From Pecten maximus (lineage: Eukaryota), in contig NC_047031.1 in assembly GCF_902652985.1 (NCBI RefSeq), positions 26,288,001 to 26,352,000 on the forward strand: a DNA stretch of 64,000 bases. Reading direction: 5' to 3'. A program made the translations under genes and the position numbers. Positions 2,517 through 44,169 of the stretch are shown here, piece by piece; within the stretch, counting starts at the first letter, position 1, and every line of letters begins with the position of its first letter. The notes beneath the pieces are model-generated. The model searched no databases and was not told the DNA's origin. It was given only the letters and a program-made list of their open reading frames with translations.

Positions 2517-2956
2517 CTGCAATTAAAAAATGAAATTGAACTTCATTTAAAAAATTTTGTTTGTACCCAAAATGCTAACACACTCTTCTAGTTGTGAGTA
2601 GTTCCATCTAAAAAAAATCTGACAAATATTGATAACAATAATATTCTGAAGTATATTGTACTGTGTAATATCACCTTACAGCCAAATCTCACAAATAGGC
2701 ACATCTTATTTTATTCTAATTGATGAGAAAATAACAAAGATTATGAACTCGAGAACATGGAACAAGTTTAAACATGATGCACAATAATAGGTTTGTTGGG
2801 TGCCTTAACGACCAAATAAAAGACATTAGAACTAATTTTGTAACAAAGGTCAGGAAAATCCTATTTATTTCAGTTGTGAGGAACTGTACATGGGACCTCT
2901 GGCATACACGTATCATTCTTATGCTCATGATCAAGCGGTGGAGAGTTAAATAGAAG

Positions 2957-3173
2957 CTCTCTAGCCGAGCAGCTAGTATTTACCTTGGTTATAATGGATC
3001 CCTGGTAAATATACTTGTTAAAATATACCACTTAGCTACATTGAGAGATAATCTTTTTAGCTCAATTGGTAGAGCATCAGACTAATAAGTCATAGGTCCG
3101 GGGTTCGATACCTAGCAGTTCGATACCTAGCAGAGGCAGTGATTTAAATTTTATAAGTCATGCACTCGTTACA
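2957..3173 (+). mobile_element. Degenerate tRNA-containing LTR copy (~3000-3173, plus) preceded by an inverted partial copy (2957-2993)
   Basis: CCCTGGTAAAT...TAGCTCAATTGGTAGAGC...GGTTCGATACC...GAGGCAGTGATTTAAA...GTTACA matches the 42.7-43.85 kb LTRs. Confidence 0.8.
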
Positions 3174-42700: not shown

Positions 42701-42859
42701 TGTAACCCTGGTAAATACTAGCCGCAATATACCGCTCGGCTAGAGAGATCTTCTCTTTAGCTCGATCGGTGGAGCGTAAGACTAGTAAGCCAGAGGTCCC
42801 GGGTTCGATCCCTAGCGGAGGCAGTGATTTAAATTTAATTTTTCATGCGCTCTGTTACA
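42701..42859 (+). mobile_element. tRNA-containing LTR copy 1 (159 bp)
   Basis: TGTAAC...GTTACA; tRNA-like 42751-42823 with A box TAGCTCGATCGG and B box GGTTCGATCCC; TCTG on both flanks. Confidence 0.85.
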
Positions 42860-42973
42860 TCTGTATTTGGTGTCAGGTGGGAATTCAAAGTAATAATTTA
42901 CCAGGGCACATGCTCTCTCTCTAGGTGCACTGTAGTATTTTAACATAGTTTCTCAGGGGAATCAATATATATA

Positions 42974-43129
42974 TGTAACCCTGGTAAATACTAGCCGTAA
43001 TATACCGCTCTGCTAGAGAGATCTTCTTATCAGCTCGATCGGTTGAGCGTAAGACTAGTCCCGGGTTCGATCCCTAGCTTAGGCAGTGATTTAAACTTAA
43101 TTAATCCTAGCTAGCTGCGCTCTGTTACA
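42974..43129 (+). mobile_element. tRNA-containing LTR copy 2
   Basis: TGTAAC...GTTACA with a deletion in the anticodon/variable region. Confidence 0.85.
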
Positions 43130-43190
43130 AATAAACATAGTGAGTCTAAGTTTTCTGATGTTTTATCAGCCTTTTGAAAATATGTTTCTT

Positions 43191-43340
43191 TGTAACCCTG
43201 GCAAATACTCCCCGCAATGTAGAGAATTTCTCTTTAGCTCTATCTGTTGAGTGCAAGACTAGTAATCCATGGTCCTAAGTTGGATCCCAAGCAGAGGCAG
43301 TGAAATAACTTAATATAAATTCATCATGCTCTCTGTTAAA
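43191..43340 (+). mobile_element. tRNA-containing LTR copy 3 (older, diverged)
   Basis: TGTAACCCTGG...CTCTGTTAAA; flanks TCTT and TCTA. Confidence 0.75.
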
Positions 43341-43532
43341 TCTAAAAGGCTGATAAAACATCTGAAACCTTCAGTATCTGTAATGATAATGTGAAATAAA
43401 TTAAGGCCATAGAGTATACACTGTATCTATATATCCTCTACAACAGTGTCTTCAGTCATAGGGTAGACGCAGACCTACGTCACAAAATAATAATTGTCTG
43501 ATAAAAAAATAAAACAAAAATATAAAATAAAA

Positions 43533-43847
43533 TGTTGCGGCTATATATATATAGTATTTACCAGGGTTACATACTCCCCCTCTAGGAAAGAACTTGTTCT
43601 CAAGTTTTCCAGTGGTATTTAAACAGAGATGCCTTCGCAAACAGCGATGAGTATCATTCGCAAGTCCCTACATTGGCGCCAATGTAACAGGGCACAGGAT
43701 TGATTAAACTTAAATCACTGCCTGCGCTAGGGATCAAACCCGGGACCTCTAGCTTATAATTACTAGTCTTACGCCCAACCGATCAAGCTAAAGAGAAAAT
43801 CTCTCTAGCCGAGCGGTATATTGCGGCTAGTATTTATCAGGGTTACA
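43533..43847 (-). mobile_element. TRIM: 5' LTR 43847-43683, PBS 43681-43664, 111-bp internal region, PPT 43583-43574, truncated 3' LTR 43571-43533
   Basis: Minus strand: ...GTTACA T TGGCGCCAATGTAGGGAC ... CTTGAGAACAAGTTCTTTCCT AGAGGGGGAG TA TGTAACCCTGGTAAATACT. Confidence 0.85.
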
Positions 43848-44169
43848 TACACAAGTTGGTGGTTTTCCCCAACCTGTTTATATGATTTTTCATGACTAAA
43901 TAATGCGACCTGGCTTAAAAAAAATCAAAACTTCAGCTTAATATGTTTTTGGCTATTTTAAAGTAACAAAACCATACCTCAATTGGTGTATTATAGACAA
44001 GTTTACGTATCATTCACAAGTTGGTGGTTTTCCCCAACCTGTCTAGGTCTACTGAGTACTGTAAGCCATATTGATACTACATGTAGTTTTGTGTGAACAC
44101 CCTTCTTCTTTGAAGTTTTGTAAGCGTACACTACATATAAATACAAGCCAACAGCAAAAACAAACACTT

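What the first reader, a model, noticed from the sequence alone, without database searches (positions are those of the whole stretch)
43533..43847. Miniature LTR retrotransposon (TRIM) whose LTRs carry a tRNA-derived Pol III promoter: a tRNA analogue of Cassandra
Seen (minus strand): a 165-bp repeat with TGTAAC...GTTACA ends is followed 1 nt later by TGGCGCCAATGTAGGGAC, then a 111-bp non-coding interior ending CTTGAGAACAAG...AGAGGGGGAG-TA, then the start of a second copy of the repeat. Each full repeat holds a ~73-nt tRNA-like segment (D-stem, A box, CTAGTAA loop, B box, GGAGGCA-type end; Thr-like) with broken acceptor and anticodon stems. There is no run of 4 or more T from the tRNA part through the interior. 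Established: the 18-mer is close to the tRNA-Lys(CTT) PBS TGGCGCCCAACGTGGGGC; LTR-PBS-short interior-PPT-LTR defines a TRIM; plant Cassandra TRIMs use a 5S-derived Pol III promoter inside the LTR. Inference: this is a ~440-bp non-autonomous, possibly Pol III-transcribed LTR element mobilised in trans by a Gypsy, whose solo LTRs would normally be annotated as SINEs or pseudo-tRNAs. I do not know of a described animal example, but could not search.
Basis: partly seen in the sequence, partly recalled or inferred. Interest (0 to 1): 0.9.

Follow-up and report, generated by a model that had tools for sequence, protein, structure and literature searches.

The report
Known scallop tRNA-LTR mini-retrotransposon (Helenus)

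Summary
On the minus strand lie a 165-bp LTR (TGTAAC...GTTACA), one T, an 18-nt primer site, a 111-bp interior ending in a purine tract, and the first ~38 bp of a second LTR.

Across the genome the canonical form is LTR 159 + interior 105 + LTR 159 = 423 bp.
- 18 of 22 independent insertions have perfect 4-bp target duplications.
- The two LTRs of one element are 94-100% identical.
- One insertion is missing, by exactly 427 bp, from contigs of other runs.
- An exact 27-mer of the LTR start occurs 732 times. The purine-tract/LTR junction occurs 244 times.

The primer site is a perfect 18/18 complement of this genome's tRNA-Lys(UUU). LTR positions 58-114 align to tRNA positions 8-65, best to the genome's own tRNA-Thr(AGT). 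No tRNA fold survives.

Kojima 2024 (PMC10886601) named this class Helenus (TRIMp3). His Table S1 lists Helenus-1_PeMa from Pecten maximus with the same 159/105/423/4 dimensions, and his sequence matches.

Pol III transcription and the Gypsy helper remain unproven. The scan's first readers noted likely copies of this and sister families on other DNA of this genome (s1-786404, s1-785281 and others; I did not check those).

Verdict: real, correctly interpreted, already known.

The parts
43683..43847 (-). 5' LTR of the window copy. It is 165 bp, against a canonical 159 bp; the extra 6 bp sit in the former anticodon arm. Ends are TGTAAC...GTTACA.
   Evidence: 89% identity to the LTR of the young copy in L008.
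43719..43790 (-). tRNA-derived segment inside the LTR. The A-box-like TAGCTTGATCGG lies at 43790..43779 and the B-box-like GGTTTGATCCC at 43740..43730. In younger copies the B box is a perfect GGTTCGATCCC.
   Evidence: alignment to the genome's own tRNA-Thr(AGT) and tRNA-Lys(TTT), z 12-17 against shuffles; no intact tRNA fold.
43664..43681 (-). Primer binding site, 17/18 complementary to the 3' end (with CCA) of tRNA-Lys(UUU). Canonical copies match 18/18.
   Evidence: tRNA-Lys(ttt) genes end GTCCCTACATGGGCG.
43572..43682 (-). Non-coding interior, 111 bp against a canonical 105 bp. It includes the PBS, and the polypurine tract AGAGGGGGAG at 43583..43574.
   Evidence: 84% identity to the interior of the L008 copy.
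43534..43571 (-). Truncated 3' LTR. The first 20 nt are intact, followed by a (TA)n insert and GCCGCAA; the rest is missing.
42701..42859 (+). Young solo LTR of the same family (copy A), flanked by the 4-bp duplication TCTG/TCTG.
   Evidence: 96.9% identity to the L008 LTR. By eye, 156/159 to the published Helenus-1_PeMa LTR.
42974..43129 (+). Older solo LTR (copy B) with an internal deletion. Flanks are tata/aata.
   Evidence: 86% identity.
43191..43340 (+). Much older solo LTR (copy C) of this or a related subfamily. Flanks are tctt/tcta.
   Evidence: 72% identity.
2943..3173 (.). Two further old LTR pieces of this or a related family: 3000-3173 on the plus strand and 2943-2991 on the minus strand.
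   Evidence: 71-72% identity.

Best explanation
The stretch is a decayed, 3'-truncated insertion of Helenus-1_PeMa, a non-autonomous LTR retrotransposon in miniature (TRIM, subclass 'TRIMp3').

Its life cycle follows from the anatomy. An RNA that starts in the 5' LTR and runs into the 3' LTR is reverse-transcribed by enzymes borrowed from an autonomous LTR element. Host tRNA-Lys(UUU) primes the minus strand at the PBS. The purine tract primes the plus strand. A borrowed integrase inserts the TG...CA-ended DNA and makes a 4-bp target duplication. LTR-LTR recombination then leaves solo LTRs and (LTR-interior)n arrays.

The LTR core descends from a tRNA, closest to tRNA-Thr(AGT), and keeps A- and B-box-like motifs. 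These are the likely internal Pol III promoter.

Shown here: the structure, the target duplications, the primer tRNA, the tRNA descent, recent activity, and identity with the published family.

Inferred: Pol III as the transcribing enzyme (I put it at about 0.5) and a Gypsy-type helper.
For: Structure and spread:
- 1665 first-look candidates in the 918-Mb genome.
- 27 complete copies of 159+105+159 bp. Of 22 independent, evaluable insertions, 18 have perfect 4-bp duplications, three match 3/4 and one does not match.
- One 3-LTR array (L022) has its own duplication.
- 244 exact PPT/3'LTR junctions and 732 exact LTR starts, with 0 in the reversed-pattern controls.

Recent activity:
- LTR pairs are 94.3-100% identical; 7 of 25 pairs are identical.
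- contigs of three runs skip exactly 427 bp (423 + 4) at the L008 insertion. This is an empty-site allele.

Primer and tRNA descent:
- more than 20 tRNA-Lys(ttt) genes have a 3' end that, with CCA added, is an 18/18 complement of the canonical PBS.
- LTR positions 58-114 align to tRNA positions 8-65, best to the genome's own tRNA-Thr(AGT).

Published match:
- Kojima 2024 defines Helenus. Table S1 lists Helenus-1_PeMa (Pecten maximus, xPecMax1.1) as LTR 159, interior 105, total 423, TSD 4.
- The DataS1 sequence differs from the L008 copy at 2 of 159 LTR positions and 1 of 105 interior positions (by eye).
- Fig. S2C shows the same PBS under tRNA-Lys.
Against: Nothing speaks against the identification.

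Against the Pol III step:
- The tRNA part has lost its acceptor stem.
- The A box has G14-A15 where tRNAs have A14-G15.
- No tRNA model scores it at all.
- The RNA-library contigs available are short. Most run into unrelated flanking sequence, as expected of read-through or DNA carry-over, and they cannot show a start site.
- The element lacks A4 runs about as much as T4 runs in its canonical form, so missing terminators are weak evidence.

Against the Gypsy helper: the only link found is the shared 20-nt PBS region.
Confidence: 0.93

Rival explanations
1. It is the same TRIM, but transcribed by Pol II or by read-through from host genes. On this view the tRNA-like core is only the fossil of a SINE or tRNA insertion into an ancestral LTR and has no promoter role.
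For: No tRNA fold is left and the A box is imperfect. RNA-library contigs with family sequence mostly continue into unrelated flanks. Kojima 2024 states that Pol III function is not validated for Helenus.
Against: The B box is a perfect GGTTCGATCCC, and the A-to-B spacing is tRNA-like in young copies.

By eye, the A-to-B region differs at only one position between the Pecten family and its Mizuhopecten counterpart Helenus-3_MiYe, whereas the rest of the LTR differs at about nine.

Only 1 of 25 full copies has a T4 run on the sense strand. That run sits in one LTR of the oldest copy. A4-bearing variants, by contrast, were propagated.
Confidence: 0.35
2. It is a tRNA-derived SINE mobilised by a LINE. 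On this view the LTR-like pairing in the window is a chance juxtaposition of two SINE copies.
For: The LTR has a tRNA-like head with A and B boxes and is about 160 bp long. Many isolated copies exist.
Against: Copies have exact TG...CA ends, no A-rich or LINE-like tail, and a constant 4-bp duplication. The same PBS-PPT interior lies between paired copies at at least 244 places, and an empty site differs by exactly 423+4 bp.
Confidence: 0.01
3. It is a 264-bp tandem (satellite-like) repeat rather than a transposon.
For: Arrays with three LTRs, or with an interior on the outer side of an LTR, exist (L022, L005, L011, L016, L024).
Against: Most copies are dispersed two-LTR units on all large contigs, each with its own target duplication. 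Even the 3-LTR array in L022 has one. Such arrays are a known by-product of TRIMs: Cassandra (PMC7215508, title and abstract) and LTR-11_DR (Kojima 2024).
Confidence: 0.01

Closest known systems
Helenus-1_PeMa (Helenus group, 'TRIMp3'; Kojima 2024, Biology 13:119, PMC10886601)
   Same: Everything that could be measured agrees: LTR 159 bp, interior 105 bp, total 423 bp, 4-bp TSD, tRNA-Lys PBS, Thr-like tRNA-derived LTR core. The sequence agrees too. The young copy in L008 differs from the published sequence at 3 of 264 positions, and window solo LTR A at 3 of 159 (by eye).
   Different: The flagged window copy is an old member. It is about 87% identical to a young copy, carries two 6-bp insertions, has one PBS mismatch, and has lost most of its 3' LTR.
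Helenus-3_MiYe (Mizuhopecten yessoensis) and Helenus-2_ArIr (Argopecten irradians)
   Same: These are the sister families in other scallops. Their dimensions are nearly the same (159/107/425 and 160/105/425), as is the PBS type.
   Different: They come from other species. The MiYe LTR differs from the PeMa LTR at about 10 positions, and its PBS reads CA-CGTAGGGA where Pecten has CA-TGTAGGGA. This parallels the two tRNA-Lys(ttt) variants...TACGTGGGCG and ...TACATGGGCG, seen in this genome.
Cassandra (plant TRIM with a 5S rRNA-derived Pol III unit in the LTR)
   Same: It has the same architecture and the same idea: a small-RNA-gene promoter inside the LTR of a non-coding LTR element. Tandem arrays also occur.
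   Different: The inserted piece is 5S-derived rather than tRNA-derived. Cassandra is found in plants and is reported to make Pol III transcripts (stated in Kojima 2024). No sequence is shared.
biv-TRIM (Satovic et al. 2019, PMC6934838)
   Same: It is a TRIM in bivalves, with solo repeats and tandem forms.
   Different: The 2019 authors could not unambiguously identify a canonical PBS in biv-TRIM, and its interior carries a conserved TGATCCCAAAGGAC segment. The element here has a perfect tRNA-Lys PBS and lacks that segment.
tRNA-derived SINEs (SINE2)
   Same: Both have a tRNA-derived head with A and B boxes and a similar unit length. A solo LTR would look like a SINE or pseudo-tRNA to an annotator.
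   Different: This element has no tail and fixed TG...CA ends. It has a 4-bp TSD, a PBS and a PPT, and paired copies.

Membership tests
Helenus / TRIMp3 (Kojima 2024) | Two direct LTRs around a short non-coding interior (whole element 311-1263 bp) | tested here: met
   159+105+159 = 423 bp in 27 fetched copies. The window copy is 165+111+truncated LTR.
Helenus / TRIMp3 (Kojima 2024) | PBS next to the 5' LTR, complementary to a tRNA | tested here: met
   18/18 to tRNA-Lys(ttt)+CCA in canonical copies, 17/18 in the window copy.
Helenus / TRIMp3 (Kojima 2024) | Polypurine tract next to the 3' LTR | tested here: met
   GGAGGGGGAG-TA lies directly before TGTAAC. The exact 27-mer junction occurs 244 times.
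Helenus / TRIMp3 (Kojima 2024) | tRNA-derived sequence in the LTR with box A (TRGCY...YGG) and box B (GGTTC) | tested here: met
   TAGCT...CGG and GGTTCGATCCC. Alignment to the genome's own tRNAs gives z 12-17.
Helenus / TRIMp3 (Kojima 2024) | 4-bp target site duplication (animal Helenus) | tested here: met
   18 of 22 evaluable insertions are perfect and 3 more match 3/4. Solo LTR A in the window has TCTG/TCTG.
Helenus / TRIMp3 (Kojima 2024) | Sequence match to the deposited family Helenus-1_PeMa | tested here: met
   The DataS1 text was compared by eye with L008 and the window. No programmatic alignment was run, because that would have required typing the published sequence.
Helenus / TRIMp3 (Kojima 2024) | Transcription from the internal Pol III promoter (the 'p3' of the name) | not testable with these tools
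   Only assembled contigs of RNA libraries were on offer. These show no starts, ends or strand. The 2024 paper leaves this point open too.
Helenus / TRIMp3 (Kojima 2024) | Mobilised in trans by a Gypsy-superfamily element | tested here: inconclusive
   A Gypsy-type group (PNMA-type gag + zinc knuckle in L075; RVT_1 + RT_RNaseH_2 in L077) carries the identical PBS plus two further bases. No similarity to Helenus goes beyond 20 nt, its LTRs are unrelated, and both fetched copies have broken frames.
Cassandra | 5S rRNA-derived sequence in the LTR | tested here: not met
   The LTR core aligns to tRNA. No 5S hit appears in the Rfam scans.
tRNA-derived SINE (SINE2) | 3' tail (A-rich, simple-repeat or LINE-derived), variable TSD, no PBS/PPT/LTR pairing | tested here: not met
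biv-TRIM | No canonical PBS; conserved TGATCCCAAAGGAC in the interior | tested here: not met
   Features as given. The interior read has a canonical PBS and lacks that segment.

The most novel reading that the evidence does not exclude
Four independent insertions of this family, of very different ages (97%, 89%, 86% and 72% identity to a young copy), lie within 1.15 kb of the window (42701-43847). The most novel reading not excluded is that resident Helenus LTRs, if bound by Pol III factors, attract new insertions of the helper's integrase, as tRNA genes attract Ty3.

The evidence leans against this. The distances between the insertion points and the neighbouring tRNA-like starts are not fixed (about 165 and 99 bp). 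Only 2 of 29 other fetched loci show an extra copy within 1.5 kb.
Probability: 0.05. Interest if true: 0.55.

Novelty: already known. Interest (0 to 1): 0.12.

Why it matters

For annotation, solo LTRs of this family look like SINEs or pseudo-tRNAs and should be masked with the Helenus library. There are at least 732 LTR starts in this genome.

- the exact primer gene: a multi-copy tRNA-Lys(UUU), 18/18;
- the closest tRNA to the LTR core: the genome's own tRNA-Thr(AGT);
- copy-number lower bounds for this genome;
- signs of very recent activity: identical LTR pairs and one presence/absence polymorphism.

The open question stays open: whether an LTR element in an animal is really transcribed by Pol III. 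A young, polymorphic family such as this one would be a good place to test it.

Tried and rejected
- **tRNA detectors.** ARAGORN on the window and the Rfam tRNA model at E<=10 on the window and on three young copies found nothing. The tRNA descent therefore rests on primary-sequence alignment.
- **RNA evidence.** Only Logan contigs were on offer. They show family sequence in RNA libraries, with LTR parts more often than the interior, but no start, end or strand. DNA carry-over cannot be excluded. I draw no conclusion on transcription.
- **Terminator avoidance.** T4 runs occur in 1 of 25 copies and A4 runs in 8 of 25. The A4 variants are shared by descent, giving about 3 events against 0 propagated T4 events. 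That is too few to test.
- **Helper search by shared PBS.**
  - One recurrent hit (L076 type) turned out to be a rearranged Helenus: an LTR, the PBS, then an inverted LTR piece.
  - The other (L075/L077) is a Gypsy-type group that shares only the PBS region.
- **Second TRIM formed by copies A and B.** Rejected. The spacer is unique in the genome and A has its own TSD.
- **A first pattern of over 35 places was refused.** I shortened it to fit the stated limit.
- **No consensus.** The consensus line that DNA alignment prints by itself was not used. The published consensus was read but never typed into a tool.

Full report
**Observation**

Read on the minus strand, the window holds:
- a 165-bp repeat at 43847..43683 with TGTAAC...GTTACA ends;
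- one T, then TGGCGCCAATGTAGGGAC;
- a 111-bp interior (43682..43572) ending AGAGGGGGAG-TA;
- the start of a second repeat at 43571, intact for 20 nt, then carrying a (TA)n insert and lost by about 43534.

Three more copies of the repeat lie on the plus strand just upstream: 42701-42859, 42974-43129 and 43191-43340. Two older pieces lie at 2943-3173.

**Genome-wide behaviour**

The window's own genome has 918,306,378 bp in 3983 contigs. A search gave 1665 first-look candidates, and the 40 that were scored showed a uniform architecture.

In the 29 fetched loci, the element is LTR 159 bp + interior 105 bp + LTR 159 bp = 423 bp. I extracted 27 complete copies with their flanks. Four are parts of longer arrays and two are one segmental duplication. 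That leaves 22 independent insertions to judge:
- 18 have a perfect 4-bp target duplication;
- 3 match at 3 of 4 positions;
- 1 does not match.

A 3-LTR/2-interior array (L022, 687 bp) has its own duplication. The ends are always TG...CA and there is no tail.

Exact-word counts give lower bounds: 732 LTR starts and 244 purine-tract/3'-LTR junctions. The reversed-pattern controls gave 0.

This is LTR-retrotransposon behaviour, not SINE behaviour.

**Age and activity**

The two LTRs of one element are 94.3-100% identical, and 7 of 25 pairs are identical.

I laid contigs of four RNA-library runs on one young copy (L008). Contigs of three runs join position 1496 to 1924, skipping exactly 427 bp, which is 423 bp of element plus 4 bp of duplication. 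The fourth run has a contig that crosses the flank/LTR junction. This insertion is therefore present in some samples and cleanly absent in others. The family was active recently.

The flagged window copy is old by contrast. Against L008 it shows 87.1% identity and 39 mismatches, of which 25 are transitions and 8 are CpG decay. It also carries two 6-bp insertions and has lost most of its 3' LTR.

**Primer**

A pattern for a tRNA T-loop followed by an acceptor 3' strand ending TGGGCG found 66 sites. More than 20 of them end GTCCCTACATGGGCG. ARAGORN calls these tRNA-Lys(ttt) (sequence). With CCA added, this is an 18/18 complement of the canonical PBS TGGCGCCCATGTAGGGAC. The window copy has one mismatch.

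**The tRNA-derived core**

LTR positions 58-114 align with tRNA positions 8-65, that is, from the D arm to the T arm.
- The best match is the genome's own tRNA-Thr(AGT): local score 47 against a shuffle mean of 14, z 14-17. It shares the anticodon loop CTAGTAA.
- tRNA-Lys(TTT) is second, with a score of 42.

The A-box-like TAGCTCGATCGG and a perfect B box GGTTCGATCCC keep a tRNA-like spacing. The acceptor stem is gone and the anticodon stem is broken. Neither ARAGORN nor the Rfam tRNA model scores any copy, young or old. The segment is a tRNA relic that keeps promoter-like motifs. It is not a tRNA gene.

**What is known**

A full-text search led to Kojima 2024 (PMC10886601). That paper:
- defines Helenus as TRIMs with a tRNA-derived sequence in the LTRs;
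- reports them in six animal phyla, including pteriomorph bivalves;
- notes 4-bp TSDs in animals, tRNA-Thr-like predictions in seven bivalve families, and tRNA-Lys among the bivalve primers;
- notes PBS similarity only to Gypsy elements;
- proposes the name TRIMp3 for Cassandra, Helenus and Ajax.

Its Table S1 lists, for Pecten maximus assembly xPecMax1.1, Helenus-1_PeMa with LTR 159, interior 105, total 423 and TSD 4.

The deposited sequence was compared by eye:
- it differs from the L008 copy at 2 of 159 LTR positions and 1 of 105 interior positions;
- it differs from window solo LTR A at 3 of 159 positions.

Fig. S2C of the paper shows the same PBS. The finding is therefore a member of an already described family.

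The match also indicates that the genome is Pecten maximus or something very close to it. The assembly size and contig count fit my memory of xPecMax1.1, but I did not test that.

A later search found no paper that validates Pol III transcription of Helenus. biv-TRIM (PMC6934838) is a different element; its authors could not identify a canonical PBS.

**Mechanism, and what is shown versus inferred**

Shown:
- the LTR-PBS-interior-PPT-LTR anatomy;
- the primer tRNA;
- the 4-bp duplications;
- solo LTRs and arrays;
- recent transposition.

Inferred:
1. *Pol III transcription from the A/B boxes.*
   - For: the boxes are kept. By eye, the A-to-B stretch differs at one position between the Pecten family and its Mizuhopecten counterpart, against about nine in the rest of the LTR. 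Only 1 of 25 full copies has a sense-strand T4 run.
   - Against: the A box is imperfect; the canonical element lacks A4 runs about as much as T4 runs; the RNA contigs cannot show a start.
   - If Pol III is used, the element has no internal terminator. The transcript would have to end in flanking DNA, and the stretch from the start site to the LTR end would serve as the repeat for strand transfer. This is my inference.
2. *A Gypsy helper.*
   - A search for the same PBS followed by a non-Helenus sequence found a recurrent Gypsy-type group.
   - L075 has a PNMA-type gag with a zinc knuckle.
   - L077 has RVT_1 and RT_RNaseH_2 between LTRs of about 480 bp that are 96% identical; the element is about 5.2 kb.
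   - It shares only 20 nt with Helenus, its LTRs are unrelated, and both fetched copies have broken frames. This is a lead, not a result.

**Limits**

I worked with natural copies only.
- After, the genome search no longer cut out loci. Three more stretches were fetched with the fetch from genomes.
- The copy numbers are lower bounds from exact words.

**Verdict**

It is already known as Helenus-1_PeMa, so interest is low.

The scan's first readers also noted tRNA-LTR mini-elements on other pieces of this genome: s1-786404, s1-785281, s1-786410, s1-786426, s1-786427 and s1-785307. By their lengths these fit Helenus-1, -2 and -3_PeMa and relatives. I did not check them.

Noticed in passing
window 42701-43847: Four independent insertions of the same family lie within 1.15 kb. 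Their ages differ widely: 97%, 86%, 72% and 89% identity to a young copy. Three are on the plus strand and one on the minus strand. Only 2 of 29 other fetched loci show an extra copy within 1.5 kb, so this is a local cluster rather than a general rule.
   Followed up: partly
window 42860-42973: The spacer between solo LTRs A and B occurs only once in the genome, and A has its own TCTG/TCTG duplication. The neighbouring first-stage note of a 'second TRIM with a Leu-type primer site' (s1-785413) is therefore not supported: these are two separate solo LTRs.
   Followed up: partly
window 43148-43175 and 43344-43371: A 28-nt inverted repeat (93% complementary) brackets solo LTR C. It looks as if the LTR landed in the loop of a hairpin-forming or MITE-like sequence (pair I8).
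   Followed up: no
window 43846-43880 and 44011-44045: A 35-nt direct repeat (94%) with 165-bp spacing abuts the 5' end of the flagged element. Next to it, 44007-44021 resembles 15 nt of the Helenus interior (43651-43665). Unexplained; it may be a remnant of an older related element (families D5 and D8).
   Followed up: no
L076:511-760 (G000:C16:36055910-36056159): A rearranged Helenus form: LTR positions 29-152, 12 odd bases, a 20-nt match to the interior start (a T plus the PBS and one further base), then an inverted copy of LTR positions 1-100. The same PBS-to-inverted-LTR junction occurs at least 7 times in the genome.
   Followed up: partly
L008:1496-1924 (G000:C4:34454393-34454821): Presence/absence polymorphism of a complete Helenus-1 copy. 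Contigs of runs X11, X13 and X14 carry the empty site (a 427-bp skip). Run X1 carries the flank/LTR junction.
   Followed up: yes
L075 and L077 (G000:C2:37107300-37114300; G000:C5:44559700-44567700): Two related Gypsy-type elements, 73% identical over 3.8 kb, have the same tRNA-Lys(UUU) PBS as Helenus-1 and an identical 35 nt after the LTR. L075 keeps a 401-aa gag-like ORF (PNMA + zf-CCHC). L077 keeps RT and RNase H pieces in separate frames.
   Followed up: partly
G000:C9:9904630-9922708, C400, C401, C615: The primer tRNA-Lys(ttt) genes sit in tandem clusters with spacing of about 1.2-2.9 kb. A second variant ending ...TACGTGGGCG is dispersed as single genes.
   Followed up: no
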